Positions 5,640-50,800 of a stretch of DNA of 64,000 bases are shown piece after piece (the first letter of the stretch is position 1; each line of letters starts with the position of its first letter). This stretch comes from Asterias rubens. Its lineage: Eukaryota. The position numbers and the translations under genes were made by a program. The stretch spans positions 15,934,001-15,998,000 of the forward strand of contig NC_047063.1 of assembly GCF_902459465.1 (NCBI RefSeq). Direction: 5' to 3'. The notes under the pieces were generated by a model that saw only the letters and a program-made list of their open reading frames with translations, was not told the origin of the DNA and did no database searches.

Positions 5640-6035
5640 TTAAAGGAACACGTTGCCTTGGATAAGTCGAGTTGGTCTTTGAAAAGCGTATGTAACCGTT
5701 TGTTATAAAATGCGTATTATGGTTAGAAAGACGTTTAAAAGTAGAATACAATGATCCACACACATTTGCCTCGAAATTGCGTGGTTTTCCTTTTACTTTG
5801 CGAACTAACACGGTCGGCCATTTATGGGAGTCAACAATTTGACTCCCATAAATGGCCGACCGTGTATGTCGACGAGAGGAAAAAGGAAAACCACGCGATT
5901 TCGAGTGATACTTGTGTGGATCGTTATATTCTACTTTTAAAATATCTTAGTTTCTAACCATGCATTCTATAACAAACGGTTACATGCGCTTTTCAAAGAC
6001 CAACTCGACCGATCCAAGGCAACGTGTTCCTTTAA
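5640..6035. mobile_element. Family B fold-back MITE (TTAA|AGGAACACGTTGCCTTGG TIR, Kolobok-like)
   Basis: Long TIRs, TTAA at both ends, central palindrome CACGGTCGGCCATTTATGGGAGTCA...TGACTCCCATAAATGGCCGACCGTG. Confidence 0.9.
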
Positions 6036-6614
6036 GGGAATATACATTATTACACTATGGCAGAACTTAATGTTTCAAGTTACTTATAAGCAGAGCTGCC
6101 AAATAATGCACCATAACTTAAAACCAACACCAATTAAAAACAAAGAATTATGTTACCTCCATTCTGTTTGATGTGAGAGCTGACTTTTCAACGCGGCGGA
6201 TTTAACAGTGTGGCTTTTACTTTTTAAAGGGAGGGTATTCCTTTGGTAAATACTCCAAGAATTGTTGACCATGATATTGGCTGCAGCTGTTGATAGTTCA
6301 TAACAATTTATTTTGAGAATAAATAGACAATTTATTTTAAGAAACATCCCTTGATGTTTCAGAGAATGTAATAAGGGGACTTTAAATGTTAAGTGATTGG
6401 TGCAATATGCTTTGGATTTTTTTATTAAACATGTTCTTATCACGTTGGCTGTGACATCCAAGTTATGTCGGAGAGCAATCTTCCAAACTCATCAATTTTT
6501 GTAACCATTAATTATAATTTATAAGATCTCTTCTCTGCTATGCACAATCTATCTTCATCGTGTTTTGTTTAAGTAAAATTTCACGATGTGTCTTGGATAC
6601 TCTTTTAAAACCAT

Positions 6615-8651: not shown

Positions 8652-9310
8652 CAGGGCCCAACTTCATAGCGCTGCTTAAAGGAACACGTTGCCTTAGATC
8701 GGACTAGTTGGTCTATAAAAAGCGTTTGTAACACCGTTTGTTATAAAATGCATATGGTTGGAAAGATGTGTTAAAAGTAAAGTACAATGATCCATACAAA
8801 TTTGCCTCGAAATTGCTTGGTTTTCCTTTTACTATGCGAACTAACACGGTCGGCCATTTATGGGAGTCAAAAATTTGACTCCCATAAAATTAATGGCCGA
8901 CTGTGTTTAGTCGACGAGGTAAATGAAAAACCGTGCAATTTCGAGGCATGTTTGTGTGGATCATTGATTCTACTTTTACACCATCTTTTGTACCCATATG
9001 CATTTTATAACAAACGGTTACAAACTCTTTTCAAATACCAACTCGACCGATCCAAGACAACGTGTTCCTTTAACGGTAAGCCAATTTTCGTGCCTACGGT
9101 GCAAGCGTATTTCACGGATTAGCAGAGAAATTAGGCGGCCATATTGCGCGTTCACCATGCATTTGTTTTGTTACGTCATTTATTTTCGTGCAGTAAGCAC
9201 CGGAATGTTATCACGCCTTTTCGTGTTTACGGTTAGCAGCGCTATGGAATGAAGATCGCACAGTAAACATAAAATCGGCCGCTAATCAGCGCTATTAAAT
9301 TTGACCCAGG
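8652..9310. mobile_element. Family C MITE with a nested family B copy at 8676-9073
   Basis: CAGGGCCCAACTTCATAGCGCTG ... CAGCGCTATTAAATTTGACCCAGG. The B copy is complete, with TTAA on both sides. Confidence 0.8.
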
Positions 9311-10777
9311 GCTTTAGAAAAAACAAAAAGAAGGATGTTCCTCCTGCCTGATAAATAGTCAACAGAGGGCAGGTTTCGTTTACGATTGACGGTGAACTGT
9401 GACACATTTTGTTACTAAGCGTATGCTTAGCGGTTTTACGAACTACAAAGCCGCTAAGCTTTAAGATAATATGTTTATGTCACACGATGTAATGTACATG
9501 CAACCAGTTCCAGGCATTCTCAAAGAAGAGAATCTATTGACATTTGAATATTCACACATTTCATGGGAATCGTAAAAGCATTGTTTGACGGTGAACCATT
9601 TTAAGCTACTACCGAAATGTCATGTAACAAGCACACAATAAGTTGGTTGCCTCCAAGTTACCTGTAAAGAAAAGTTGCTTCGTGTGACACATCCTTAAAC
9701 TTTGTTCGCTGATGAAATCAACCTACGCAAATAACGCGTATTATACAATAAAATCGATTCGATAGCAGAGCAAATATTATGACCGAGTTGTATTGATTAC
9801 TCTTGTGTGAATAGACATCCTGCAACTAGTGAAGAAGCCCTGAGGCATCTTCTAAGATGGCTCAGCAAATCTTGCCTTATCGACTCGTTGTCCATTTCTC
9901 GACAACAGTCATTAGCTTCTGAGGGCTATACTTTGATCGTTCGTGTAGTTTTTCATTACTTGTGTTCTAATTTTGTTTTATATTTTTATTTTTACCTTCA
10001 TGCTGTTGTGTGTAAATTGTTGCCACGTTGTTGCTGTTTTTAATCCGAATAAATTCAATCAATCAATCAATCAATTGTATTGCAGTCTAATCTCAAAGCA
10101 GAGGCAACAGTGTTGGTACACAAGCCAGTGGGAAACTAAAACGAATCTTGTGACGTTAAACACAAAAGTGACCCTATAAAATATTATATATCATCCCGAT
10201 TTGTTAGTTAACTCATGCGTTTTACCACCTTTGGGGGGAAGGGAGAAATTGCCAGATTTTCTCAGAAACAAATTATTTGCTTTGATTTTATTTCTTTTTC
10301 TCTCTCCTAATGTAAACGAATTCTGACAGATGTTGTTGAAGTTTCAAAACGAAAATTCGACACACAAAAAGCGTTCATATTATGCCACGGACATATTGAA
10401 CACAAAAAACATGCAACATGCAAGTCGTTTGTACATGGCTGATAACCTTGCGATCAAATTGTTTAGTTTTAAAAGTTTTGTTCAAAGGACATGTATACGT
10501 TTGGTAAATGACTCTGGAAATTAATGACTGTGGCAGTAGCCATTAAGTAAGTATGGTTATGTAAAAATATATCACTTATTATCCCAACAAATTTAAATAT
10601 GAGTAAACACTTCTCGGGTTGTGTAGACATTGCTCAGAAGTTTCGGCAATATCTTAAAAACCAGGACATAGGAGTGAAACAATTGAATGGTTAGATTTAA
10701 ATCCTACTACTGGGTCAAATCGGCCAAATAATCTTCAACGTACGAAGAAAATAACGCAATTTAGAGAGGGCTCACGT

Positions 10778-11156
10778 TTAAAAGCAGTGGACACTATTGG
10801 TTATTACTCAAAATAGTTGTTAGCATAAAAACTTACTTGGTAACAATCAATGGAGAGCTGTAGATATTAGAAAACATTATGAGAAACGACTCTCTCTGAA
10901 GTAACGTATAGTTTTCAACGAAGAAGTATTTTTCCACTAAAATGCTTGAATTTGATTTCGAGACCTCAGAATTAGCTTTTGAGGTCCCGAAATCAAGCAT
11001 GTGAAAGCACACCACTTCGTGTGACAAGGGTGTTTTTTTTACCAATATTCTCTCCCAACCTCGACGACCAACTGAGTTCAAATGTTCACAGGTTTGTTAT
11101 TTTATGCATATGTTGAGAAACACCGAGTGAGAAGACTGGTCTTTGACAATTACCAA
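10778..11156 (-). mobile_element. Family A MITE (one end truncated)
   Basis: TTAAAAGCAGTGGACACTATTGG start and full internal consensus. Confidence 0.85.
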
Positions 11157-11339
11157 TTTTTTAAATTCACGTCGATACGATAAACTTCAGATCCAAACTC
11201 CAAAACTAACCAAACAAAATGGTGTTTAATGTGTAACATTAGTTAGAAAGAATAAATAAGTATTGTATGAACTCATCATGATTAGTCATCCTAATCTATA
11301 TGAGTATAGGCTCCCATTATTAATTTCAAACACTGAATC

Positions 11340-17367: not shown

Positions 17368-17529
17368 ATGGTCCGAAGAGTGATTCAAAAAGAGGGCGCT
17401 ATCAGAAAAAGTTTGTGCCACAGACATAAAGAACACTTTATATCTGTGGTTGGTACACAGTTTGCCAGGGGTGTGGCAGAATCTCCTGCCGCACCGGTGC
17501 TACAATACAAATTTACATTTTTGTTTGGT

Positions 17530-17872
17530 TTAAAGACACTGGACTCTGTTGGTAATCACTCAAAATAATTGTTGCATAAAAACTTACTTGGTAACAAGCG
17601 GCCACCTAGCGTATAATAAAATTGTGAGAAACGGCGTCCACTGAAGTAACGTAGTTTTCGAGAAAGAAGTAATTTTCCACGAGTTTGATTTCGAGACCTC
17701 AGAATTAGATTTTGAGGTCCCGAAATCAAGCATCTGAAAGCACACTTCAACGTCGTGTGACAAGGGTGTTTTTTCTTTCATTGTTATCTCGCAACTTCGA
17801 CGATTATTTTGTGCATATCATGTTGAGATGCACCAAGTGAGAAAACTCGTCTTTGACATACCAAAGTGTCTT
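17530..17872 (-). mobile_element. Family A MITE
   Basis: TTAAAGACACTGGAC start and internal consensus. Confidence 0.8.
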
Positions 17873-23013: not shown

Positions 23014-23389
23014 TTAAAGGCACTGGAGACCTTTGGTAAATTGTCAAAAACCAGTCTTCTCACTTTATGCATACAAAAACAAACGTGTCAAATTTTGAGC
23101 TCAATCGGTGTTGTCGAAGTTGCGAGAAAATAATGAAAGAAAAGCACCCTTGTCGCACAAGTTGTGTGCTTTCAGACGTTTTGAATTCGAGACCTCAGCT
23201 GACGTCTCAAATTCAATTCAAATATTTTAGTGAGAAAATTGTTTTTCTCAAAAACACGATACTTCAGAGGGAGCCATTTCTCACAATGTTTTATACTATC
23301 AACAGCTCTCCATCCATTGCTCGTTACCAAGTATGTTTTTATGCTAACAGTTATTTTGAGTAATTACCAATAGTGTCTAGTGCCTTTAA
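23014..23389 (+). mobile_element. Family A MITE
   Basis: TTAAAGGCACTGGAGAC ... GTGTCTAGTGCCTTTAA. Confidence 0.9.
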
Positions 23390-23734: not shown

Positions 23735-33815
<10,081 letters not shown>

Positions 33816-34679: not shown

Positions 34680-37600
34680 GATGGGGGTTCGGAAGAGTAG
34701 AGAAAAGGTATTTAATTAGTGGTTGTTGTGCAATCATAACTCTGGGTCTGACTGAGTCAGGGACTCGGTATTATATGTATTGCCATGAATGCTCCAAGCT
34801 AGTCTCAAACCCACTCACTTGCACTCAGCTCAGTCACACTCACAGTGCTGAGTCAGTCACGAAAGACACACGGTACGACTACGAGTGCACTCCCATATCA
34901 GCATGTTCGTTGAGCGTTTTACATGTTTTACGCGAGAGTGCAACGCAACACACGAAGAAGAATATGCCCAGTGGCAAACTGAGACTTTTGTCCAACAGAA
35001 CCACTGCACTGAATTGTTACATATGGTAGTAATTGCTTACCTTCACCAAACATTTATCGTGGAAACAGCAGCACCATCGCTCGCTGTCTATCTCGTCGTC
35101 TGACTCTGACATAAACAACAACACGTGCGCTTTCGCGTTTGTTCTTCCACTCAAAATTAATGTCTTGGACCCAAGGTCTATAAGAAAGGGCCGTTCGATT
35201 TGTACGTTGAATTTAGGACAATCACAGCAGGTAGGGTACCATTCTGATATAGCGCCCTCTATAGCTCTAAATCTCACAATCTACATTATTGTAGTAAAAT
35301 GATAGTACTCATCTAAAAATTATTATATTCAAGCCTGCAAAACGACTACCTGTACCCGTAAAATAGCTCTATGTTGTACCTATAATGCTATATACCCCGT
35401 TTGTGTGAATAATTATAGTCAAAACCAAGAATGCCACACTGTAGTACCCGATCAATGTGTCAGACGGTTCATAAAGTGATACCTAGATGATTCATTGACT
35501 GCTCACACTTTTGAAATTATAAGGGGCTGTGCAGGAGATGTAGTCCTACTGTTACAATGGCGCTCACACCATGGTCCATGGAGGCTATTTCTACCTCCAT
35601 TACAACACTCCCTAAATAAGCTCCCCACAACCAGGATGAATAACACATGCTTTATTATTCAATAAAACCCGCACAACAAAATGTATTAACCCTCTCAGCC
35701 TCTTGTGGCATTTGCTGACAACAATTGTTTGTTTATTTTCATGTTGTTGAGCTATATGAGGCTTGCCCCAAAAAAGTCCATGTAATGTAGTCCATCACCT
35801 GATTATTGTCAAATACAAACCTGTTTTGATGATTGATATAATAATTTTATAATATGAAGAGGAAAAAAACAAAACAAAAATGATCTAAGTACCGGTAATT
35901 ATTTTAGGTAATGGTCATCTGTGAGGTAAATACACGCACACTTGGTCTAAAGATATTATTTTATTTTATTCATTTATTTTCACTTTGTCAGAAATGCTAC
36001 ATAATTCATTTCCTAAAATGTACAATTAACACCAGAACTGAAGGGCACAATGTACAGTGAAGTTTATTTAAAAAATTACATGTAAAAAGTCCAAAGAGCA
36101 GAGCATTGTAACAAAGCAAAATTAAGCAAAACCTACAAACAAAAAAACACCAAAAAATGCAAAATCAGCCTACATGGCTCATGAAATAATATTATTGAAA
36201 CCAAAAACTATTTTTAAAAAGAAAATTTAATTGAGAGAGTGAATATTTCACAGGTCACTAACAGAAAACAAGATGTGTGATTAAGTAACTTTTCTGAAAA
36301 CAAAAACTGTAAGATAATAGGGAAACAAGTTTCAGGATAGTCTCAAAATTTGTGATAGGTCTTGCAAATCAGATGGGGTAAACAAAATAATGATGAATTT
36401 GTTCATTTTATGATAATACAATATTGCTAAACTACATACTCCTTACACTTGTGGCTGTTTTAGCTGGAACTTGGATCTGTTTGCGCAATTAAGCATAAAG
36501 TTGAAATTGGCTGAGCAGCATTTTCTGCTAAACAGCTTTAAGAATTTGGGCCCAGCTATTTTCAGTGTACAAAATGTATACAGTATATCAAGAACATGTT
36601 GCAGATCACTCAGAGAACCAGTTAAAAAACATGCATTACACATGGGTATTTGGCTGGTAACCTGTTTCTACTCAGCAAGAAATCTAAGTAACTATATAGA
36701 CGTAAAACAAAGGGGGAAACTGCCCTCCCTCACTCGAGCAAAACAGTGGTAAAATTCAGACACTGGTAAGAAAGAAATGGTTAGAGGTAGCAAAAACAAA
36801 TTTTCATCCAGTATTACAAATTGGTACTTATGTTTTATGTAACATTCTGGGCAAATCACCCGGTTCTATACCCCCTTCAACCAATTAATAGTTTGTTCCC
36901 CATACAATAATGGCTAAACATGGAGCATTAAAACTGCTTTTACATTATGCATTACCACAAATGTTGTTAAGAAAATGAAAAAATAGTTCAAAACTTTGAC
37001 CAGCATTCACAACAATGTATAATTTTTGCAAACTGAGTCAGTGACAAAATAATCAATTGATTTGTACAGTGTACAAACCCAAGTCTTCATGGGAAAAACA
37101 TATGTATATGTTTTTCCCAAGAAGACTTGGAATTGCTGCCCAGTGAAACATTTCCCTGGCACAGTGTATAGCACTTGTGTAGAAATATGTAGCACAGGCT
37201 TTGTTGGGTGCTACTAAAAATCATCATATGGCACTAAATATCAGCTCTGCCAGTGTGCAAAACCCTTGTTCAGTCTTTTTCAGATACTTTGTGAAAATGC
37301 TGGATGAGGTAATTCCCTAAACAGTATGTGGCGAAGAGATAACCAAATTCTACAGAACTAACTTCACATTTTCATGAACTAAATGTTGAAATTAAGTGTG
37401 ACATAATTTCTCCTTCACAAGGATAATCATTTGGCACAAATTTACATCATGCATATTCAACAGCAAATAAAACACAAAATAAAAAGCAGGGAATACAAAA
37501 GAATAAATTCATGAAAGAAAACAAAAATCTACATCAGTAAAAATAATGTTCAAACATGTATGTCATACATCTAGCTATACTAACACATTTACACAAGTCA

Positions 37601-37836
37601 TTATTATAAATTTGGTAAACAAATATTAAAAAAATATCATATCTGTTCAAAAATTGAAACGAAAGAATGATCTCGTCCGTACCACAAATAATTCCCTGAA
37701 AATAAAAACGAGAACATCTCTGAAAGAAAAATGTCCCTTTAGTAAACTTCAGTAATGGATATTTACAAAATTTGAAAATGGAACTGGATTGGGTGTTGAG
37801 CTATTGATACAATCAAACTAGATTTTGCTCGTTTCT

Positions 37837-38201
37837 TTAAAGGCTGTGGACACTATTGGTAATTGTCAAAGACCAGTCTTCTCTATTTGTGTATCTCAAC
37901 ATATGCATTAAATAATAAACCTGTGAAAATTTCAGCTCAATCGGTCATCGAAGTTGCGAGATAATAATGAAAGAAAAAACACCCTTGTCACACAAAGTTG
38001 TGTGCGTTTAGATGGTTGATTTCGAGACCTCGAAATCAAATTCATGGAAAATTACTTCTTTCTCGAAAAATATGTCACTTCAGAGGGAGCCGTTTCTCAC
38101 AATGTTTTATACCATCAACCTCTCCCCATTACTCGTCACCAAGAAAGGTTTTACGCTAATAATTATTTTGAGTAATTACCAATAGTGTCCACTGCCTTTA
38201 A
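37837..38201 (+). mobile_element. Family A MITE
   Basis: TTAAAGGCTGTGGACACTATTGG ... GTGTCCACTGCCTTTAA. Confidence 0.92.
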
Positions 38202-39429
38202 CAGTTGTTTCAAATGCAAAGAATTCAGAGCTCAAAGTCTTGATGCTTTGTTTCGCAACAGCAATGTTACCTTCACACCAACACAGCAACCGACTCCAAC
38301 TCTCTGTGGTAATTGACTGGAACAGAATCCTTCAAATTCAATGACTGACAGGCCTGCAGTCAATCTCAGTCGAAACTTTACACAACTGCATAATTCCACA
38401 TGTGCAACGTTGCGCAAGTGGACTTACGCAGTTGATTAAAGTTTCATGAAATCGACCGCTGAAATTACCGGGAATAACACACTGTTGCCCTGATTTTGGC
38501 CTTAGTTCCCTTTACAAAGGTTTCCCACAGAAGTGCCCTTTGCAAAATGAAAGCGACCTTGCCCTTTCAAAGATGAAATTCCAGGCTTGGAGTGATGAAA
38601 ACCGAAGTAGACAAACTTGTTAGTGACTGGCAATGAAGGACCAGCTATCTTTTGATTTCATTGGCCGATCAGCTTTCTCACTAGTCTATTATTAAATGTG
38701 GATCCTTTTCAAAATTGAACTAGACAGCCGGACCAGTAGTGAGTAAAGTTCTGGCCAGTGGATTGTCGTTAAAGATGAACTCTGCCCTGACAATTTTTGC
38801 TTCTTATGAAGTGTTGGAAAGGGGGCCTGTAATAAATCATTTTTTCCTAAAAGCCATCAACGCAGTCGGCATGAACATCAAACGCAACGGCTTCTGTTGG
38901 GTCTTGAGGTCCACTACTTCATTTCAGTGAAGTAACAGAATGGAATACTTGTATATCGCTTCAAGGCTAATCACCTCAATAACAGGTACAAAAATTCTGA
39001 GAGGGATAGTAATTTAAACAATAATACATGTACTTTGATTAGAAAAAGAACATTTCATAATTTTAAAGTTTAAGTAAATAAACAACTAAAATCCTACAAC
39101 CACACATAATATCAACAGCAGCTTGAAATAAAAATGACTATGTTCACTTTTACCACATGGAGTTTGGTCAACTATCTGCATCAACCATTAGACAGATTAA
39201 TAATCCTTGATTGACATAGATCTTGGATCTACATTTATCGGGTCTATTGAAAGTTTACCTACATGTAAATGAATAACATCGGCTTGTATAATTGCAGGCC
39301 TGATTCTCAAATGAAAGTGCCAATTCAAAATGAAAATAGCCTTGCCCTTTTCGGCATGTTCAAGGATGTAATTCAAGGCCTGTCAACAAATCAAAATGGT
39401 CAGTGCGTAGGTGAAGATTCAGTCAAAGT

Positions 39430-42400
39430 TCAGTCAATTGGTGAGGAGTGCCGTCTCATTTTCTTAGTTGGAGGAGGGCTAGGGGTGACGCTGATTTCAC
39501 TTGTATTGTCTATTTCCTCCGTAGTGCCGGGATCAAAGTCGTCTTCTGAGACATTGGACGACTCGTCAGAGGACATCTCCCGTATGTCTCCTGGCTTCTG
39601 GAAATTGATCTTAACGAGAAGCTTCTGCAGTTGCTGGGCTCGGCTGGCCTTCTTGGGGCCAGTATCTGGCGGTGGTTTCATCACCTTCCTTGGCTGTTTA
39701 GCCAACTTCTTTGCCGGAGACTTCTTCACTTGAGACTTCTTCGCTGGAGACTTCTTTACTTGAGACTTCTTAGCTGGTGTCTTCTTTGCTGGAGACTTCC
39801 CTCCACTGTTTTTCCTGGGACGACCTAGCGGCTTCGTCTTTGTCTTTGCCTTTTTAGGTGACTCTTTTACCTTAGCTTTCGGCGTCACTTTTTTCGTCTT
39901 CTCTGGAGCTGGAGATCTGATCCTTGCAGGGCTAGCGTTAGCGTTTTTTGACCTGAAGTCAAAGGCCTCAACGGACAAAGGGGAGCCTACCTCTTCCAAG
40001 TAGCTCAGGATTTGAGGGCGAGAACGAAACTTTTTTCCTGTAGGACTGTGTGAAAACAAGGTACAAACAGAAAATCACTTGATAAAAATATTTTTTTTGA
40101 TGTGTGGATAATAATTTCATCACTTGGTGCGATCTTCTAGAACTTTAGGAAAATAGGTTCGGCAGCAAAAGTAGAAACAACTTAAAATGTAGTGCTATTA
40201 ATGGATTTCTCCATCAGGGTCCAATTTCATGGCTCTGCTTACCATAAAGCACAGAATCGGCGCTTACGGAAGCAGGGAATTCTGTGCTTATGGCAAGTGT
40301 ATTTCACGGGTTAGCGGCAAATTTGGGCTTCTGCGCGTGCGTACTCCACGTTACTAGGCATTCTACGCTTACAAGGCTAGCGCAGAAATTCGGCGCTTGC
40401 ACGTGAGCGGGGAATCATGATCGTAAGCGCAGAATTTGGGGGTAAGCAGAGCCATGAAATTGGGCCCTGATTCCTTTTCCATGAATCTGTACTCATTCTA
40501 ACACAGACCCAAAGACCAATCAGTTCACAATTTGCACACCAACACTTACATGTAGTTGAAATAGACGTGTTTTGTCTGTTCTACAATGTACATGTACATG
40601 CGTCATATTAATTGTTCAAGAAAAAAAGTGCATGCTAAGTCTAAACAGAAACGGGGGATTTTTGTGAAGCAATTTGAGGAAATTTGTTCCACGAGGTCGT
40701 TTTATAAAGTACACTCATTTGTTTACTTACAAAAACTTAGTGGACATGCTGCTACATGCACTATATAACTCAATGCAGGAAATCAAAGAAAGAGTTTCAC
40801 TCTGGCTTAAGCTTTCCTTGCAATTTTGCAGCTGAAACTCCCAGGATCATGTGGTCAGCCAGAGCTTTATCCAGAGGCTATTTAGTAAGCCTGGGTGACT
40901 AGTGAAATTTACTAATCGACTAGCCGTGCCTCAAATTGTCACGATTTTGACACTAGTCACGACTAATTTTTAATTCTCAAGCTGCATTGCAGGATATTGC
41001 TTGCCTCAGTCACAATATAGTAAAATTCACAATGAAGAAATTGAAGGATTGTATTACTGATGTCTGATTGTGTTTGGAAAGTACATGTAAATGTCAATTA
41101 TGTTGTTGTGAATACTTGTGAACCACACAATTGGTTCACCAAGCAGGAAGTTGGAATTATATTTGTAGTAGTCATGGCTGCACGATTAACCCTGCAGTGG
41201 AAAAAAATGGTAGTCAAGACTCAACTAAGCAATAACGGTTGCGACATTTTCAATACCTGCACTAGTCACCCAGGCTTACGATAGATGGATTGCAGTTCCG
41301 TCATCGACCGCCATCTTTGATGTTTGAGTAAGAGAAAAGAGGGCGGTCGATGACGCGTATTGCAATCCATCTATTTAGACTCGATTGTAATTGTAAGCAA
41401 TGCCATCTACATGTAGTTTGTTATTACCTCCAGTAGTAAACGTCCACCTTCCCAGCACTCACGCCTTGCATTCTCTGAGTAGCAATACGTCTCCATCCAT
41501 CAGGAATTACTACTTCGCCATCAGCCCCACCGTCAGGAGACACAGAAGCCTTTGCAGCTGGGGACTTTGCAGCGGGGGATTTCTTTGGGGTTGTTGAACT
41601 TTTAGCAGGTTTTGTCCCATCAGGTTTGGACTTCTTAGGCATGCTTGATATTTCAGATTCTACATTTGAGGCGGTTTTGGTTTCAGACTCTTCACCCTTG
41701 TCAGCAGGTTTTTCATCCTTTGATTCAGTTTTAGTCTCTGACGCCATTTGCTCTTTGAGTTCTGAATTCCTCTTTTTCATGGGGAGTTCCTTTTCTGGTT
41801 TTGTCTCTACTGCTCCTCCACTCTTGACATCCACTGCGGGTGACTTGGCTTCCTTGACGGTTGGCTTTGCCACCTCAGCCCTGAGGGCCTCCTCTTGCCT
41901 CCTGAGTTCTTGCTCCATCTCAGCACGGTGTCGCTTCTTGGGTGTGAGGGGACGGGGTGAAGTTGAATGTACAGGAACCACTAGGGGGCTGATTTTGCAG
42001 ATTGGTGATACATCACTGTCACTAGAGCCGGATGCGGATCTGCAAAGGTACAATCAAACTCTGTTTACTTGATGTTGGGTAAAATAAACATGAACACTTT
42101 CTCCAAGTATTATCACACAATTTTTGTACATCTTTAACTGAAGGTTAAATAAACCAATCCAGAAAGTATTAAAAAACCAACAAGATTTGTATTTTGGCAT
42201 CTACTTAGAATATTTAAAGTATTTCATTTGAGCAGTGTAGGTATTTCAGAACAACCAACTCAGTCCATTAATTAAAAAATGGCACCCAAGTATTTTATTC
42301 AGGATTACATTATAAGCCCGATTCTGTCCCTTTTTTATGTACTCGTGGCAGTCCTGCCCAGGTGCATTATTGTTAATTTCATTGTTGTTTGTAACTTTTG

Positions 42401-43327
42401 AATGTCATTATATTTTGGATATTGACACATTTTTGCCCATAAAGGTTTTCAAATGCAATGTATTTTAATATGTTTTGTTTGCACCAATTTCATACATGAG
42501 GTTAGGGAAACTTGTCATCCCCCTACCCCTCCCCCCCCCCCTAGTGCTCACATGAAGACTCTATTTGAAGGGATTTAGACCCAGTTACTGGGGCGCTGAT
42601 ACTCTGGGTTTTTCTAATTAATTGGGACTATTGGAAATTGAGTACCTACATCACAAAGTTGAATTTTACATTTCCCTTGCTCTTATTAAACATGTTAATA
42701 ACACTCAGCGAGGACAGGGCGGAGATCTGAATAGAAAGTACACACTGTCTTTGTGCAGTGCTAGTCCGTCCGTCGAGTTGTCTCAAAGTCGAGTTGTCCG
42801 AACCGTTGAGTTGTCCGAACTGTCGAGTTGTCTGAACGGACGAGTTGTCCGACGGACGTGTTGTCTGACATTCAGTCAGTGGTGGGTGATTTTATAGAAT
42901 TCGAATTGGACCTTTTTTTTTAATGCAGCACGATGTGGGATAGCAAAGCAAAATATTGTATGATGGGGAAATAATATACTGCAGCTTTGATTTCTGCCAG
43001 GTACGAACAAAGATAATACTCAAATTACTAATTTTGCGCGGGCAAACTGCATGAGCTGGACATTTGCAAAGCCCAAGCAAAGGTGTGCACGATTGAAATT
43101 ATAATAATTATTATGTTTTTGAATGCAGCGAAAGTATTGAAATTTGACAGTCAAAAGCACGCAGTAATTCCAACTGGCAATGCAAATTTCAACTGTCTTT
43201 AGCTGCACAAGTTATCAGTCTTAAAAGCAAAACACATCACGTAAGAAAACTATCAATCTTACCCTGATCTAGGCCTGGAAATATCCTCAGGTGCCTCGAA
43301 AGTTGTAATAACGCATTCTTCCGCCAT
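39430..43327 (-). CDS. Methyl-CpG-binding domain protein, 430 aa, 3 exons; MBD + AT-hook + SPxK repeats + MeCP2-like KLLVKINFQ
   Basis: Exons 43327-43263 (MAEECVIT...RSG), 42039-41428 and 40045-39430; phases match, 1293 nt. The MBD reads IPDGWRRIATQRMQGVSAGKVDVYYWS|PTGKKFRSRPQILSYLEEVGSPLSVEAFDFR, with the intron at the position typical of MBD genes. GRPRK at 39825-39811, KLLVKINFQ at 39624-39598. Confidence 0.92.
40215..40469. mobile_element. Family C MITE in the MBD-gene intron
   Basis: TIR CAGGG(T/C)CCAATTTCATGGCTCTGCTTACC, about 29 bp with 1 mismatch; AT on both flanks. Confidence 0.9.
40886..41278. mobile_element. Non-autonomous hAT-like element
   Basis: TIR TAAGCCTGGGTGACTAGTG / CACTAGTCACCCAGGCTTA. 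The left flank CTATTTAG recurs at 41371-41378 beyond the adjacent small MITE, a possible 8-bp TSD split by that insertion. Confidence 0.75.
41281..41374. mobile_element. 94-bp ATAGA-terminated fold-back MITE
   Basis: ATAGATGGATTGCA..GTCATCGACCGCC / GGCGGTCGATGAC..TGCAATCCATCTAT. Confidence 0.75.
42765..42870. repeat. Short tandem array of ~16-17-bp units (TCGAGTTGTCCGAAC-like)
   Basis: About six GAGTTGTC(C/T)GA cores in tandem. Confidence 0.8.
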
Positions 43328-43900
43328 TTTGGCAATAATAAAGTGCGCCCTCTCTAGTTATATATTTATTCATAGCCGCGACGGTTAATACCTAACAAAA
43401 TGAAATGAAGGGTTTTTCTGACCCGTGCGCACACCACTTCGATCGTTGCTTTCAACCTATCCTTAATTTGTTTTAATATCTCGTCCCTCTCCTCAGTTAC
43501 ATTATTCAATAAAATAGAACTAGAGCTCTTGCATATGTCTAGTGTTCCAGCATTAGTGAGACTGTATAATAAACGGTGATTTCATCAACAAGTATCTCTA
43601 ACAGTTGGGTATAGTTTTGGGTATCAAATTTAATCACATTTTAATCTAATTTAATCATCTAATTTATTAATCTAATTTAATCAAACTTTTAGCATTTTTT
43701 GTGCATTCATGCCTACAGCTTTTTTTTTTTTTTTTTTAAGTCAGAGTTTGTTGTTTTTTGTAATTTTTAACAATAATGAATGTAAACACGCCAATTTAAG
43801 TCTTTTTAACTTCTGTCGAGTATTTTTGTGATATCTTTAATAAACCTTAATGAATTGAATTGAAATTGGATTGAATATACGCATGTTTGTTTTGTGGCAG

Positions 43901-44289: not shown

Positions 44290-46245
44290 CTTACTTTTTC
44301 GCCCAATTTGGATAAAAGTGCTGAACTTGTAACATGCCTACCTCTTGTGATTTTTTAATTTCGTATGCCTAATTTGACTAAATTGCTGAACTAACCCTTT
44401 GTTAGTTTTGTTACATTTTTTGATTTTTTTTGATAAATTAATTCCTGAACTTACCCCATGTGATTTTTTAATATTGTTGCCTAAATTTGCCTCATCTTAT
44501 TAAAATTGCTTACACCCTTGTGAATTTTTGTTTTGTTTTTGGCCTTATTTTGATAAAATTCCTGAACTTAGCACTTTGTGATTTTGTTAACTTTTTGGCC
44601 TAAATTTGATAAAAAATTCCTGAACTTACCCCGTAATATTTTTACAAAACTTTCTGGCCTTTTTTTGATAAAATTAATGAACTATATCTTTTTCACTATT
44701 AGGCATTATTTTGATACAATTCCTTTTCTTTTTTGCCTAAATTTCATAAGATCCCTGAACATACTTTTTTGCCATTATTTGATAAAACTACTGAACTAAC
44801 GCCTTGTGATTTGTGGCACTTTTTGGCCAATTTTTTTGCTGTTGAGAGTTTGACAAGTACACAAGGCTTAATAAAAGCCTTGTTGCTTTTGAGGGCAAAA
44901 TTTGTTGCTTTGTATAGGGCAACATTTGACAAGTACACAAGGCTGTAGCCTTGTTGCTTTTTAGGGAAAAAGTTGTTGCTTTTTAGGGCAACATTTGATA
45001 AGAACACTAGGCTTATAGCCTTGTTGCTTTTTAGGGCAGAATTTGTTGTTTTTTAAGGCATACTTTGATAAGTACACAAGGCTAAAGCCTTGTTACTTTT
45101 CAGGAAAAGATTTGTTGCTTTTTGGGCCAAAATTTGTTGCTTTTTAGGGCAACATTTGATAAGCACACAAAGCCTTGTTGCTTTTTAGGACATAATTTGT
45201 TGCTTTTTAGTGCAAAATTTGTTGCTTTTTAGGGCAACATTTGATAAGCACACAAGGCCTTGTTGCTTTTTAGGACAAATTTGTTGCTTTTTGGGGACAA
45301 AATTTGTTGCTTTTTAGGGCAGAATTTGTTGTTTTTTAGGGCAACATTTGATAAGTACACAAGGCTTGTTGCTTTTTAGGGCAACATTTGAAAAGTTCAC
45401 AAGGTTAGAGACCTGCTAACTCTCATTACAATATACGGCTGGTTTCCCGTTGTAAAGGTAGTGACCAGCTAAACTCTTATGCAATGTACTGCAATCTTTG
45501 GCTGGTTTCCTGTTGTATCAGTAGAGACCAGCTAACTCTTATGGACTGTGTACTGCAATCTTTGGCTGGTTTTTCGTTGTAAGACTAGAGACCAGCTAAC
45601 TCTCATGCAATATGTATTGCAATGTATGGCTGGTTTCCCGTTGTACAGGTATTGCAATCTTTGGCTGGTTTCTCGTTGTAAATTTGCTGCTTTCTGTGCA
45701 AAGTGTAATAAGTACACAAGGCTAAAGCCTTGTTGCTTTGTAGGGCAAAATTTGTTGCTTTTTAGTGCAAAACTGATAACTACACAAGGCTATAGTCTTG
45801 TTGCTTTTTAGGGCAAAATTTGTTGGGTTTTTAGGGCACCATTTGATAAGTACACAAGGCAAATTTGTTGCTTTTTAGGGCAGAATTTGTTGTTTTTTAG
45901 GGCAACATTTGTTGCTTTTTTATGCAACGTTTGAAAATTCGACAAGTACACAAGTAGCCTTGTTGCTTTTTAGGACAAAATTTATTGCTTTTTAGGGCAC
46001 GATTTGATAAGTACACAAGGCAAAATTTGTTGCTTTTAAGGGCAACATTGATAAGTACACAAGCCTTGTTGTTTTGAAGGACAAATTGTGTTGCTTTTTA
46101 GTGCAAAGTTTGACAAGTACACAAGTCTTGTTGCTTTTTAGGGCAAAAATTGTTGCTTTGTAGGGCTTTTTTTTTTGGATAAGTACACAAGCCTTGTTGC
46201 TTTTTAGGGCAAACTTTTTTTCTTTCAATGCAAAATTTGATAAAC
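44290..46245. repeat. Compound satellite block of three unit types
   Basis: About 44290-44830: ~45-50-bp TTTTGGCCTAAATTTGATAAAA..CCTGAACTTACC units. About 44830-45407 and 45681-46245: modular TTGTTGCTTTTTAGGGCAA and TTTGATAAGTACACAAGG units. About 45408-45680: ~60-bp TGGCTGGTTTCCCGTTGTA..AGAGACCAGCTAACTCT units. Confidence 0.9.
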
Positions 46246-47828: not shown

Positions 47829-50800
47829 TTACTTGATCATAAGTCTGCCCTTCTGACTGCGATTGCTGAAGTTATTATTGCGACTCCCCATGTAGAAATA
47901 CTCTCCCTTTGCGAATTGCATGAGTGCTCCTGGGTATGAAGCGGGTGCGTTGTTCAGTAGATTGTTCATCGTGTTCTTGTTCGCCACAGATTGAGACGCA
48001 CAGGTGGCTGCTTCCATACACCTGAAAGGGGCAAGAAATATTAGACAAATTCATTCTTAGAAAGACACAAACTCTCATGCTGCGGTGTAGTAAGGACTTT
48101 TCAGGTGGTGGTGCGAGGGGACAGCCCCACCCCCTTGGCGTTACCACTGCTGTTATGTCTGTGTCCAGATTACACAAACAAAATGATTTCCAATAAACTG
48201 AAAGCTAAACCTCAAATACAATAATAGGTCACATGCGAGTTACATTTGAATAAAATCTGGTACAACGACTTGTTTTATAGTCACAAGTTACAGCTATCAA
48301 TTGAATTCCTCAGACTATTATAGAGACAGTTGCTATGTCAAATGGTTTAGGGCAATCTTTTGTATAGTAAGCTCTAAATAAGCAGAAGCCTGGTACTACT
48401 GTTCCATACACATTCCTTCAAAATCGTGTATGGGTGTTTGGCTTCTCTTGTAATGTAGCAGTCTGAAGAATTCAACTTCAAGTGGTAACTTGTGATCAGG
48501 CAAGTCATGTACCAGACATTATTCGCAAATGGATTATTGCATCCCAATTCAGTTATGAAAAGAAACAAAACTTCATTCCTGTGGTTGAATGATGGGAAAT
48601 GAAGCTAGTTACAAAAATTATACCAAAAGGGGAAAAATTACCAGGTATAATAACTCCAGGTGTCAGGATCTGGAAACAGGGTATACAAATTTGAAAATTG
48701 GGGCCCAAAATTTGTCATTTAGAGTTCAATTAGACAATGTCTAAATTTGTGACTACAGCTCTGGCTGTTGCTATGGACACCTTATGCTCAATGCACACTC
48801 GCTTGATGATCATTCCACAGTAGCAGCCATTAAAGGAACATGTTGCCTTGGATCGGTCGAGTTGGTCTTTGAAAAGCGTTTGTAACCGTTTGTTAAAAAA
48901 TGCATATGGTTAGAAAGATGTGTTAAAAGTAGAACACAATCATCCATACACATTTGCCTTGAAATTGCGTGGTTTTCCTTTTACTTTGCGAACTAACACA
49001 GTCGGCCATTTATGGGAGTCAAAAATTTGACTCCCATTAATGACCGACCGTGTTTGTCAACGAGGTAAAAGGAAAACCACGCAATTTCGAGTGACACTTG
49101 TGTGGATCATTATATTCTACTTTTAAAACATCTTTCTAATCATATGCATTTTATAACAAACGGTTACAAACGCTTTTCAAAAACAACTCGACCGATCCAA
49201 GGCATCGTGTTCCTTTAACATAGACATGGCTTCATAATCCTGACCCATACAAACAAATCTACACATAAAAACAACAACAACAATACCAAACAAACACCCA
49301 GAGACCCATTCAGAAAAAAACCCACAATTATTTGAGTTTGATTTTTAACCTACTGGTAGAATCCCGAGCTTGCTATGTTGACTGCCAAGTCCTTAGGTGT
49401 AATGTTAGGGGTATCCTGGAAGTAAATCCATTTCACTGTAGCATCGGTCCACATCGTACTCTGCTCAAAAGGCATCGGATAGTTATCAAGCTGATTCAAC
49501 ATCTGCACAATGTTAGTCCGGTCAGTGCCTGCATATATACAGAGAGAGAATAACTTGATTTTAGGGTCAGCCTTTTGGCAGTACAAGACTAAAACAGGAC
49601 ATTCAAAAGAGAAAGGCAATGTATGAATAGTTAGCTCAGGCTATGCTGTGGCTATTAGTGATTGCTAAAGGTGTTGCTATAGGTAATGCTTTTACCCGTT
49701 AGAGACAATTCATTTCTGTATAAACATCACAAAACAAACAGACAGTGGTAATATTTTTCATTTCTTTACTCACTTTTTTTTTCAGTAAAATGTCACTAAT
49801 AATAACATGAAACAGAAAATTCAGTTTTGTGTTCAGATATTGGGATACATTGATAGCAATCTTATTTGGGAAGTTTCATATCCAGACATGAAGTTTCATA
49901 TCCAGACATGAAGTTTCATATCCAGACATGACCTTTTGATCTCTTAATATGAGTGGAAGTAGGTCAAATTTTGCGGCCGTTTGTGGCATTTGGGTACAAG
50001 CTGCTTGTGGCCGCTACAAGTGTGATTTCTAAAGGGTTAATCCACATGCAAATAATAGGGCGGTCAGCTTGGGGTAGTGTTGTCTTGCCTCGCATTCCAT
50101 CTCTAGGACCCCTGTTCGAATCCCACCGGGGCACTATGTGGATTGTGCTTTAACGTCCCTACCTGACTACAAGGGTTTTCCCTGGACTAGTTCTCGGGGT
50201 GTCCTGCCACATCTAAAACTTAAACTTCTTCAGTGTCTTCTACATTTAGGCTCTTGACTAGTGCATCTACATTGATAAATTTTGTTTTTCTAAGAGTCCT
50301 GCCGTCGATTTCACACAACTCTTCCTAACTTAGGATTAGTCTTGGGACTAAGGACGAGTTAAGTTCCATATCAATAGATGTTAGGACGCATTGAACTCGT
50401 TCTAAATTAGGACGGGTTACTCATCCTAAATCAGGATAGGATTAATCCATAGAAACATAACCCGGAGAACACCGAGTGTGTCATTGTGTGTCCGTTTTCA
50501 TTGTATGACCATTTTAAGGATGCGCGTACGATTTCTTTTTTACACGTGTATGGCAAAATATTTTGCCATTTTGCCATACAGTAGACAACACATAAGACAT
50601 CACATTGGCCAATGAAAACACTAGAAACGGTTTATCTGCGATGTCGTCTTGCCATTATGCCATAAACGTGGTCACGTGATGCTCATTTTGCCATACACAC
50701 GTCTCGTGTGATGATCATTTGCCATCACAGAGGGCGGCACAGCTCAGCGTTCTCCGGGTTCTATTTCTATGGATTAATCCCAGCGTTTCGTAATATCAGC

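What the first reader, a model, noticed from the sequence alone, without database searches (positions are those of the whole stretch)
39430..43327. Invertebrate MBD protein with a MeCP2-like layout (MBD, AT-hook, KLLVKxxFQ) and no glycosylase
Seen: the MBD is followed by GRPRK, KSPAKK/SPxK repeats and LQKLLVKINFQKPG, then an acidic tail and stop. I found no MBD4 glycosylase exon and no MBD2/3 C-terminal domain between here and the PRMT6 promoter. Known: human MeCP2 has MBD, then an AT-hook, then SPGKLLVKMPFQ at the start of its TRD. MeCP2 is usually regarded as vertebrate-specific, derived from an ancestral MBD4/MeCP2 gene with a glycosylase. The MBD here is a mosaic: DVYY.SP.GKKFRS.PQ and FDFR are MBD2/3-like, while EEVGSPL..EAFDF is MeCP2-like. 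Inference: a glycosylase-less, chromatin-binding MeCP2-like reader may exist outside vertebrates.
Basis: partly seen in the sequence, partly recalled or inferred. Interest (0 to 1): 0.72.

Follow-up and report, generated by a model that had tools for sequence, protein, structure and literature searches.

The report
Sea-star MBD4 reader half, split off
This starfish gene encodes a methyl-DNA reader that looks like vertebrate MeCP2 because it is the front half of an ancestral MBD4 repair gene that split in two in sea stars, and it shows that a short MeCP2 motif known to bind the DNA methyltransferase DNMT3A is much older than vertebrates.

Summary
Window 39430-43327 (minus strand) is the CDS span of a three-exon, expressed gene. 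Its 430-aa product is identical to Asterias rubens XP_033648028, misnamed 'neurofilament heavy polypeptide-like'. The layout is: MBD, strongly basic linker (GRPRK, SPAKK repeats), QKLLVKINFQKPG, acidic tail, stop. RNA contigs from four runs use the predicted junctions and run unspliced through the stop. The window holds no glycosylase exon.

The gene is not a separate MeCP2 lineage and not MBD2/3-derived. Sea-urchin MBD4 proteins carry the same post-MBD module (E 2e-11) and the MBD4 glycosylase in one polypeptide, with a 9-10 kb intron between the parts. In sea stars that exon ends in a stop. The glycosylase is a separate gene with its own first exon: 44 kb downstream in Acanthaster, 5.9 and 6.4 Mb away in the two Asterias species. 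This is a fission of MBD4.

K-LLV-K-xx-F keeps the three residues (K219, K223, F226) that MeCP2 needs to bind the DNMT3A ADD domain. The motif therefore looks ancestral to the MBD4/MeCP2 family.

The SPAKK repeats are a recent tandem expansion, and the AT-hook occurs only in sea stars. The MBD-only tree was unresolved, and no vertebrate MeCP2 sequence was available for it. The scan's earlier notes hold nothing on this.

The parts
43263..43327 (-). Exon 1: ATG at 43327, 65 coding nt (MAEECVITTFEAPEDISRPRSG), donor GG|GTAAG
   Evidence: The RNA contigs carry about 60-71 nt 5' of exon 2. The model is identical to P0145.
41428..42039 (-). Exon 2: disordered Ser/Lys/Glu-rich N-terminal region plus the first half of the MBD (41428-41516 = residues 197-226)
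   Evidence: Both borders are used exactly by transcript contigs in 3 of the 4 RNA runs (X2 rec 12, X3 rec 17, X4 rec 24); the X1 contig confirms the 42039 border but stops at 41453. Pfam MBD profile 8-35.
40046..41427 (-). Intron 2, phase 2, splitting the MBD between ...DVYYW and SPTGKKFRS. It contains a MITE-like repeat (about 40216-40470).
   Evidence: The intron sits at the same place in Acanthaster and urchin genes.
39946..40045 (-). Second half of the MBD (residues 227-259)
   Evidence: Pfam MBD profile 38-72. Aligned to MeCP2 and MBD2 structures with both Arg fingers, the Asp and the Tyr conserved. AF2 block pLDDT 91-96.
39811..39825 (-). AT-hook-like GRPRK (residues 300-304) inside a linker of net charge +35 over 120 aa
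   Evidence: Acanthaster has the canonical RGRPRK. Urchins lack it at this position. Pfam's AT_hook model was not reported.
39705..39799 (-). 15/30-nt tandem array encoding the KKSPA/KKSQV (SPAKK-type) repeats
   Evidence: TRF: 6.3 copies, 78-87 % matches. It falls in an alignment gap in Acanthaster.
39526..39693 (-). Conserved post-MBD module, residues 344-399: PRKVMKPPPD...KASRAQQLQ-KLLVKINF-QKPG...SEDDFDPG. The core KLLVKINF lies at 39601-39624.
   Evidence: BLASTP outside the MBD: E 2e-11 to S. purpuratus MBD4 and E 8e-15 to P0004. The second K and the F are conserved in at least 90 % of sequences. No nonsynonymous change between the Asterias species. A low-to-moderate-confidence helix is predicted over the motif.
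39430..39525 (-). Acidic/Ser-Pro tail ending ...KKMRRHSSPID, stop TGA at 39430-39432
   Evidence: The ending ...RRHSSPI[DV]* is shared with Acanthaster.
38557..39429 (-). 3' UTR (minimum extent), colinear with the genome
   Evidence: Contigs of 3 runs reach 38557 and X2 reaches 38406. Assemblies break at a repeat. No AATAAA/ATTAAA was found in 38300-39429, so the true 3' end is undetermined.

Best explanation
The finding is the complete coding span of an expressed Asterias rubens gene that is the 'reader half' of a split MBD4 gene. In sea urchins one gene encodes the MBD, a basic linker, the module ...Q[KR]LLVKINFQ... with an acidic patch, and, after a 9-10 kb intron, the MBD4 mismatch glycosylase. 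In sea stars the exon carrying the second MBD half and this module ends in a conserved stop. The glycosylase exons have become an independent gene with a new Met-initiated first exon. It lies 44 kb downstream on the same strand in Acanthaster, and 5.9 and 6.4 Mb away in the two Asterias species. Shown: the gene structure, expression, orthology, fission and purifying selection. Inferred: the 430-aa product is a stand-alone 5-methyl-CpG reader, because all MBD residues that contact mCpG in MeCP2 and MBD2 are kept. Its +35 linker (AT-hook-like GRPRK, SPAKK repeats) would add non-specific, AT-rich DNA affinity. Its K-LLV-K-xx-F patch would dock an acidic pocket of a partner, most plausibly the ADD domain of DNMT3, as the identical-spacing patch of MeCP2 does. 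That would couple methyl-DNA reading to control of de novo methylation without base excision. The resulting MeCP2-like architecture arose by fission. In vertebrates, from my own knowledge of the literature, the comparable separation came from gene duplication (MeCP2 plus MBD4). The KLLVKxxF module itself is inherited from the common MBD4/MeCP2 ancestor.
For: The gene model equals the public protein. RNA contigs from 4 runs and 2 organisms use the junctions and read through the stop into at least 0.87 kb of UTR. There is no glycosylase exon in the window or in the orthologous loci. Urchin MBD4 proteins P0005, P0022 and P0149 carry the MBD, the module and HhH-GPD in one protein. Similarity outside the MBD is significant at E 2e-11. 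The urchin exon map places the break at the long intron. Sea-star glycosylase-only genes P0036, P0148, P0027 and P0118 share a conserved own N-terminus, and P0036 matches the human MBD4 glycosylase at 259 bits. Genomic positions are. dN/dS is 0.15, with zero nonsynonymous changes in the MBD, module and tail. The MBD contact residues align to MeCP2 and MBD2. For MeCP2, SPGKLLVKMPF binds the DNMT3A ADD domain and needs K219, K223 and F226 (PMC9798253); all three are conserved here. The motif did not arise in 200,000 shuffles. By language-model features the nearest clusters are vertebrate MeCP2.
Against: No binding was tested. The ADD-docking role is transferred from a mammalian peptide study to a protein with only 8-9 matching residues. 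A phmmer search of 1.84 billion representatives with exon 3 did not reach vertebrate MeCP2, so homology of the motif with MeCP2 rests on the motif, its position and family membership, not on a significant alignment. The MBD-only tree is unresolved, and MeCP2 and vertebrate MBD1-3 could not be included. AF2 gives only pLDDT of about 63 over the motif. Contigs show dominant isoforms only, so rare chimeric transcripts are not excluded, especially in Acanthaster, where the two genes are 44 kb apart on the same strand. The presence of an ADD-bearing DNMT3 in this genome was not checked here.
Confidence: 0.75

Rival explanations
1. A true pre-vertebrate MeCP2 orthologue: MeCP2 and MBD4 were already separate genes in the deuterostome ancestor, and this gene is the MeCP2 one.
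For: The layout is MBD - AT-hook - KLLVKxxFQ. The nearest Atlas clusters are vertebrate MeCP2. The best PDB hit is chicken ARBP/MeCP2. NCBI names the L. pictus and Penaeus relatives 'MeCP2-like'.
Against: In three urchin species the same module sits in the same polypeptide as the MBD4 glycosylase. The sea-star glycosylase gene has no MBD of its own, so there is one ancestral gene, not two. Synteny in Acanthaster keeps the two halves in order on one strand.
Confidence: 0.06
2. A lineage-specific paralogue derived from MBD2/3, as suggested by the MBD2/3-like strings DVYY.SP.GKKFRS.PQ and FDFR.
For: The MBD2 domain scores nearly as high as MeCP2 (55 against 57 bits). It shares the GKKFRS and FDFR strings.
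Against: MBDa and MBD_C are absent, while the fly MBD2 control scores 91 and 104 bits. The stretch between YL and FDF is 11 residues, as in tick and urchin MBD4 (fish MBD4 and MeCP2 have 12), against 8 in MBD2. The post-MBD module is shared with glycosylase-bearing MBD4. GKKFRS also occurs in tick and barnacle MBD4.
Confidence: 0.03
3. Still one MBD4 gene: the short mRNA is only one isoform, and a rarer transcript joins exon 3 to the glycosylase exons by long-range or trans-splicing.
For: In Acanthaster the glycosylase gene lies 44 kb downstream on the same strand, with only opposite-strand genes between. L. pictus has been annotated both as fused and as split. Contigs cannot exclude rare isoforms.
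Against: In A. rubens the two genes are 5.86 Mb apart on opposite strands. In A. amurensis they are 6.39 Mb apart, with the glycosylase gene on the 5' side. A same-strand PRMT gene follows the MBD gene. No GT donor follows the position equivalent to the urchin exon end. The stop and the ...RRHSSPI tail are conserved between Asterias and Acanthaster. The glycosylase genes have their own conserved Met-initiated exon.
Confidence: 0.04
4. A decaying leftover of the fission with no function of its own.
For: Most of the protein is predicted to be disordered (mean pLDDT 62.5; Atlas 0.44). Part of the linker is a recent microsatellite-like expansion.
Against: The ORF is intact in Asterias rubens, A. 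amurensis and Acanthaster. It is expressed in four RNA runs. dN/dS is 0.15, the CDS is 98.7-100 % identical per exon against about 90 % in flanking DNA, and there are no nonsynonymous changes in the MBD, module or tail.
Confidence: 0.03

Closest known systems
Sea-urchin MBD4 (S. purpuratus XP_783908, 550 aa; Diadema setosum XP_072176784, 502 aa; L. pictus XP_054752344, 545 aa)
   Same: They are colinear over the MBD, the conserved intra-MBD intron, PR.V..PPP, KAS..Q..Q[KR]LLVKINFQ and the acidic D[DS]FD.G patch. The exon structure is the same up to the break point.
   Different: The urchin proteins continue, after a 9-10 kb intron, into the HhH-GPD glycosylase. The sea-star gene stops there. 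Urchins lack the GRPRK AT-hook and the SPAKK repeats.
Vertebrate MeCP2
   Same: There is a single MBD with the same mCpG-contact residues. The intron is at the same codon of the MBD, and one large last exon carries everything downstream (the human exon 3/4 border at N126 is from my own knowledge). An AT-hook lies between the MBD and a K-LLV-K-xx-F-Q patch. The three residues needed for DNMT3A-ADD binding are kept. There is no glycosylase.
   Different: It is not a one-to-one orthologue; it is co-orthologous to MBD4 and MeCP2 together. No NCoR/SMRT interaction region was seen. The tail is acidic, whereas MeCP2's C-terminus is basic and His/Pro-rich. The spacing from MBD to motif is longer. The glycosylase-less state was reached by gene fission, not by duplication.
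Vertebrate MBD4
   Same: It belongs to the same ancient 'Mbd4 group' (PMC8330077). The partner sea-star gene matches the human MBD4 glycosylase domain end to end (259 bits).
   Different: In the vertebrate MBD4 proteins I examined (four fish, one bird), the MBD and glycosylase are in one protein and there is no recognisable KLLVKxxF module.
MBD2/3
   Same: The MBD sequence strings GKKFRS.PQ and FDFR are shared, and the MBD score is similar.
   Different: There is no MBDa or MBD_C. The stretch between YL and FDF is longer (11 against 8 residues). The downstream sequence differs.

Membership tests
MBD4/MeCP2 group of MBD proteins | A single canonical MBD (Pfam PF01429) with the two Arg fingers, the Asp and the Tyr | tested here: met
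   68.4 bits, E 4e-19. The residues align to R111, D121, Y123 and R133 of MeCP2 in the HMMER alignments.
MBD4/MeCP2 group of MBD proteins | Orthology to glycosylase-bearing MBD4 shown by sequence outside the MBD | tested here: met
   The post-MBD module matches S. purpuratus MBD4 at E 2e-11. It is colinear in alignment A1, with the same exon layout.
MBD4/MeCP2 group of MBD proteins | The MBD groups with MBD4/MeCP2 rather than MBD1/2/3 in a phylogeny | tested here: inconclusive
   The 72-column tree is a comb. Only one MBD2 and no MeCP2 or vertebrate MBD1-3 sequences were available as references. The stretch between YL and FDF (11 aa against 8 in MBD2) favours the MBD4/MeCP2 type.
MBD4 proper | A C-terminal HhH-GPD mismatch glycosylase in the same polypeptide | tested here: not met
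   There is no HhH-GPD in P0145 and no glycosylase exon in the window. The mRNA ends in exon 3. The domain is encoded by a separate gene 5.86 Mb away.
MeCP2 | The K-LLV-K-xx-F patch at the start of the TRD (the DNMT3A-ADD binding site; K219, K223, F226) | tested here: met
   KLLVKINF lies at residues 367-374. The function of the MeCP2 patch is from PMC9798253. Binding itself was not tested.
MeCP2 | An AT-hook between the MBD and the TRD | tested here: inconclusive
   LGRPRK is present here and RGRPRK in Acanthaster. Pfam's AT_hook model was not reported. The hook is absent from urchin orthologues.
MeCP2 | The NCoR/SMRT interaction domain (NID) | not tested
   No full-length MeCP2 reference could be obtained. 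By reading, the sequence after the motif is acidic and Ser/Pro-rich, with no basic cluster.
MeCP2 | One-to-one orthology with vertebrate MeCP2 to the exclusion of MBD4 | tested here: not met
   The urchin orthologues carry the MBD4 glycosylase. An exhaustive phmmer search with exon 3 did not retrieve MeCP2.
MBD2/3 | MBDa (p55-binding) and MBD_C (coiled-coil) domains | tested here: not met
   They are absent from P0145 and P0002. The fly MBD2 control scores 90.9 and 104.1 bits.
Neurofilament heavy polypeptide / linker histone (the RefSeq name for this gene) | An intermediate-filament rod or an H1 globular domain | tested here: not met
   Pfam reports only the MBD. The name reflects the KSP-type repeats, which are a 15/30-nt tandem array.

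The most novel reading that the evidence does not exclude
K-LLV-K-xx-F is an ancient DNMT3-ADD docking (H3-tail-mimic) motif of the MBD4/MeCP2 family. The ancestral deuterostome gene already made both a short 'MeCP2-like' reader isoform and a long reader-glycosylase isoform, as hinted by the L. pictus short model that ends by read-through at the exon border and by complete short mRNAs in other invertebrates. Vertebrates (by duplication) and sea stars (by fission) then independently resolved this bifunctional gene. On this reading, a core part of MeCP2's regulatory region and its link to de novo methylation predate vertebrates.
Probability: 0.3. Interest if true: 0.78.

Novelty: new variant of a known kind. 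Interest (0 to 1): 0.62.

Why it matters
MeCP2 (the Rett syndrome protein) is generally treated as a vertebrate invention whose regulatory regions have no invertebrate counterpart, and some papers state that invertebrates have only MBD2/3 (PMC5240623). Here the one short patch of the MeCP2 TRD with a mapped partner (DNMT3A-ADD) turns up in echinoderm, and more loosely crustacean, MBD4-group proteins, both with and without the glycosylase. That dates the patch to before the MBD4/MeCP2 duplication. Two open questions become testable in a tractable embryo system. Is the MeCP2-DNMT3 link ancestral? The work also corrects a misleading RefSeq name.

Tried and rejected
(1) A word-index homologue search with the full-length protein was swamped by Lys-rich low-complexity words: 8000 candidates and only 4 hits. 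(2) The same tool restricted to the urchin MBD region scored only 31 candidates and did not return MeCP2. (3) The PDB chain sequences shown have no reference id. I did not type them into a script, so they are missing from the tree and no profile-profile test against the MeCP2 ID/TRD was run. (4) The MBD-only tree is unresolved and decides nothing. (5) AF2 with an 11-row alignment gave a confident MBD but only pLDDT of about 63 for a helix over the motif and no contact with the MBD, so it is not informative for mechanism. I ran no fold search because the MBD fold is not in question. (6) Rfam found nothing in 37-44 kb. (7) The P0003 locus (a third sea-star-like sequence, apparently frame-shifted) had no DNA available. 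(8) The organisms behind the short forms P0004, P0023, P0009 and P0017 could not be identified; only run or sample codes are given. (9) The paper I recall on the vertebrate origin of MeCP2 and neural non-CG methylation (Nat Ecol Evol 2021) is not in the library. My statement that MeCP2 and MBD4 are vertebrate paralogues rests on PMC8330077 and my own knowledge. (10) The earlier scan notes held nothing relevant. (11) A hidden glycosylase in the 2 kb UTR of the short transcript L007 was rejected (best E 0.19).
Full report
OBSERVATION. The flagged span 39430-43327 is on the minus strand. The exons are 43327..43263 (ATG, donor GG|GTAAG), 42039..41428 and 40045..39430 (stop TGA). Together they give an in-frame 1293-nt CDS of 430 aa. 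The product is identical to the public protein P0145, Asterias rubens XP_033648028.1, which RefSeq names 'neurofilament heavy polypeptide-like'. Its gene occupies 15,973,430-15,977,327 of chromosome LR699093.1, which is 3,898 bp and exactly the length of the finding. Pfam MBD matches the end of exon 2 (profile 8-35) and the start of exon 3 (profile 38-72), and the full protein at 68.4 bits. The linker has net charge +35 over 120 residues and the tail -7 over 48.

TRANSCRIPTS. I laid Logan contigs of four RNA runs from two closely related organisms on 37600-43500. In three of the runs (X2, X3, X4) a single contig joins 42039..41428 directly to 40045. All four runs then have contigs colinear with the genome through the stop codon: to 38557 in X1, X3 and X4, and to 38406 in X2. 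The longest contig is 2191 nt and includes about 70 nt of exon 1. Exon 3 is therefore a terminal exon with at least 0.87 kb of 3' UTR. The contigs break at an abundant repeat, and I found no canonical poly(A) hexamer in that stretch, so the exact 3' end is open. Contigs show only dominant isoforms.

NO GLYCOSYLASE HERE, BUT ONE ELSEWHERE. tblastn with the glycosylase part of an urchin MBD4 finds nothing in the 64 kb window (best E 0.46) or in the orthologous loci of A. amurensis and Acanthaster. A search with the L. pictus glycosylase protein found sea-star proteins that are glycosylase only. These are A. rubens P0036 (234 aa), A. amurensis P0148 (240 aa), Acanthaster P0027 (250 aa) and Patiria P0118 (230 aa). 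P0036 matches the human MBD4 glycosylase domain end to end (259 bits, E 3.5e-76), including HGIGKYGNDSYRIF. All four start with a similar basic, Met-initiated exon of their own.

The positions of the two genes are as follows.
- Acanthaster scaffold DF978633.1: the MBD gene is at 608,379-615,604 and the glycosylase gene at 560,271-564,429. They share a strand, the glycosylase lies 43,950 bp downstream, and NACHT/WD40 genes and a GPCR gene lie between them on the opposite strand.
- A. rubens: the two genes are 5.86 Mb apart on opposite strands.
- A. amurensis: they are 6.39 Mb apart, with the glycosylase gene on the 5' side.
- In both Asterias species a same-strand PRMT gene follows the MBD gene.

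WHAT THE GENE IS. An exhaustive phmmer search with exon 3 returned 18 proteins. The informative ones are sea-urchin MBD4s. Diadema P0005 (502 aa) and L. pictus P0022 (545 aa) came from that search and its cluster look-up; S. purpuratus P0149 (550 aa) came. Each has the MBD, a basic linker...KFQ[KR]LLVKINFQQKG, an acidic patch and then the MBD4 glycosylase in one polypeptide. Outside the MBD, the sea-star protein matches S. purpuratus MBD4 at E 2e-11 (49 % over 55 residues).

Exon mapping shows that the urchin exon equivalent to window exon 3 is followed by a 9.3 kb (Diadema) or about 9.8 kb (L. pictus) intron or gap, and then by the glycosylase exons. L. pictus has been annotated both as one 545-aa protein and as a 353-aa 'MeCP2-like' protein plus a 211-aa 'MBD4-like' protein. 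The short one ends by read-through at exactly that exon border.

The simplest history is a fission of MBD4 at this long intron in the sea-star lineage, before Asterias and Acanthaster diverged. Both share the stop after ...RRHSSPI, and the glycosylase genes of all three genera (Patiria included) share the new first exon. A later rearrangement in Asterias moved the halves megabases apart.

The CDS is 98.7-100 % identical per exon between the Asterias species, against about 90 % in flanking DNA. dN/dS is 0.15, with no nonsynonymous change in the MBD, module or tail.

RIVAL ASSIGNMENTS. MBD2/3 is excluded. MBDa and MBD_C are absent, while a fly MBD2 control has them. The stretch between YL and FDF is 11 residues, as in tick and urchin MBD4 (fish MBD4 and MeCP2 have 12), against 8 in MBD2. 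The downstream module is shared with MBD4.

A separate ancient MeCP2 lineage is unlikely, because the urchin orthologue carries the glycosylase and the sea-star glycosylase gene has no MBD.

The MBD alone cannot decide. PDB scores are 57 (chicken ARBP/MeCP2), 55 (MBD2), 54.6 (MeCP2), 51 (MBD3), 45 (MBD4) and 29 (MBD1). A 72-column ML tree is a comb apart from the sea-star (91/97) and urchin (100/99) clusters. That tree lacks MeCP2 and vertebrate MBD1-3, for which I had no reference ids.

THE KLLVK MODULE. Alignment A1 shows a conserved block: PR[KR]V..PPP[DE] ... KASR.Q..Q[KR]LLVK[IM]NFQ..G ... D[DS]FD.G. It is present in sea stars, in urchins and in several transcript-derived proteins from unidentified organisms. 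One of these, P0004, is a complete 296-aa ORF on a 2.9 kb contig with no glycosylase. Barnacle MBD4 (with glycosylase) and a shrimp 'MeCP2-like' protein align QKIKLKF[SN]F and NKMTVKFSF at the same place. The second K and the F are at least 90 % conserved. KLLVK[IM].F did not arise in 200,000 shuffles of the protein.

For MeCP2, Kunert et al. 2023 (PMC9798253) showed three things. [quoted passage not shown] K219, K223 and F226 are required. The patch is a folded spot in an otherwise disordered TRD. The sea-star motif keeps all three residues at identical spacing. AF2 predicts a helix over AQQLQKLLVKIN, at pLDDT of only about 63, in an otherwise disordered chain.

I therefore propose, as inference, that the module is an ancestral partner-docking patch of the MBD4/MeCP2 family, most plausibly for DNMT3 ADD. 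Against over-reading: the exhaustive search with exon 3 did not reach MeCP2, and no binding was tested.

WHAT IS LINEAGE-SPECIFIC. The SPAKK-type repeats are encoded by a 15/30-nt tandem array (39705-39799) and have no counterpart in Acanthaster. The AT-hook (LGRPRK here, canonical RGRPRK in Acanthaster) is absent at that position in urchins. Nothing like MeCP2's NCoR-interaction region is apparent; the tail is acidic.

COMPARISON WITH THE LITERATURE. PMC8330077 places an 'Mbd4 group' containing vertebrate MBD4 and MeCP2 at the base of animals. PMC5240623 states the common view that invertebrates have only MBD2/3. I found no paper describing the sea-star split or the conservation of the KLLVK patch. 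Automatic annotation already labels relatives 'MBD4-like' or 'MeCP2-like'.

VERDICT. This is a new variant of a known kind and is moderately to highly interesting for the evolution of methyl-DNA readers.

Noticed in passing
window 39430-43327: The RefSeq product name for this A. rubens gene ('neurofilament heavy polypeptide-like') ignores the MBD and comes from the KSP-type repeats. The A. amurensis orthologue is 'uncharacterized protein', and the Acanthaster one is 'MBD4-like'.
   Followed up: yes
window 37835-38200; also 31048-31437, 28266-28635, 23014-23389, 29672-30044, 710-1093, 10774-11157, 17509-17870, 2317-2620: A dispersed repeat of about 370-390 bp (SINE-like) occurs in both orientations. 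It has summed word depths of up to several million in the RNA contigs, and the transcript assemblies of the MBD gene break at it.
   Followed up: partly
window about 40216-40470 (intron 2): A MITE-like element has terminal inverted repeats of about 29 nt (cagggtccaatttcatggctctgcttacc / its complement with one mismatch). Its RNA-contig depth is very high (about 8e3 to 1.4e5 across the runs). There is no Rfam match.
   Followed up: partly
window 44849-46213: A satellite built on a 22-nt unit (TTGTTGCTTTTTAGGGCAAAAT) has higher-order periods of 64-139 nt. It lies just upstream of the MBD gene promoter.
   Followed up: no
window about 29480-33815, minus strand: A PRMT-type arginine methyltransferase gene (344 aa; PrmA and PRMT_C domains) lies on the same strand, with its CDS starting about 5.6 kb downstream of the MBD stop codon in A. 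rubens (about 5.4 kb in A. amurensis). In Acanthaster the downstream neighbour is a NACHT/WD40 gene instead. This marks the rearrangement breakpoint that separated the two MBD4 halves.
   Followed up: partly
window 42770-42852 (intron 1): A 17-nt tandem repeat (CCGTCGAGTTGTCCGAA) occurs in about 5 copies.
   Followed up: no
window exon 2, residues about 23-45 of the protein: An N-terminal Ser-rich stretch followed by CKISPL is conserved between sea stars and L. pictus (…SSESSDEVLGLCKISPL…). Its function is unknown.
   Followed up: no
L010 (L. pictus CM073228.1, 6.41-6.44 Mb): Successive NCBI annotations disagree. One gives a single 545-aa MBD4. The other gives a 353-aa 'MeCP2-like' gene plus a 211-aa 'MBD4-like' gene 9.8 kb apart. 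This is either alternative polyadenylation or an incipient split, and is worth an RNA check.
   Followed up: partly
proteins: Many invertebrates have annotated MBD4-type glycosylases without an MBD: Lottia, Lamellibrachia, Desmophyllum, Amphimedon, Glandiceps, odonates. Pollicipes has both forms on one contig. The MBD-glycosylase link may be evolutionarily labile, or the gene models may be partial.
   Followed up: no
window 48830-49219, 8673-9074, 5640-6036: A repeat of about 390 bp matches itself on both strands (palindromic or foldback-like). It is also present near the A. amurensis and A. rubens loci.
   Followed up: no
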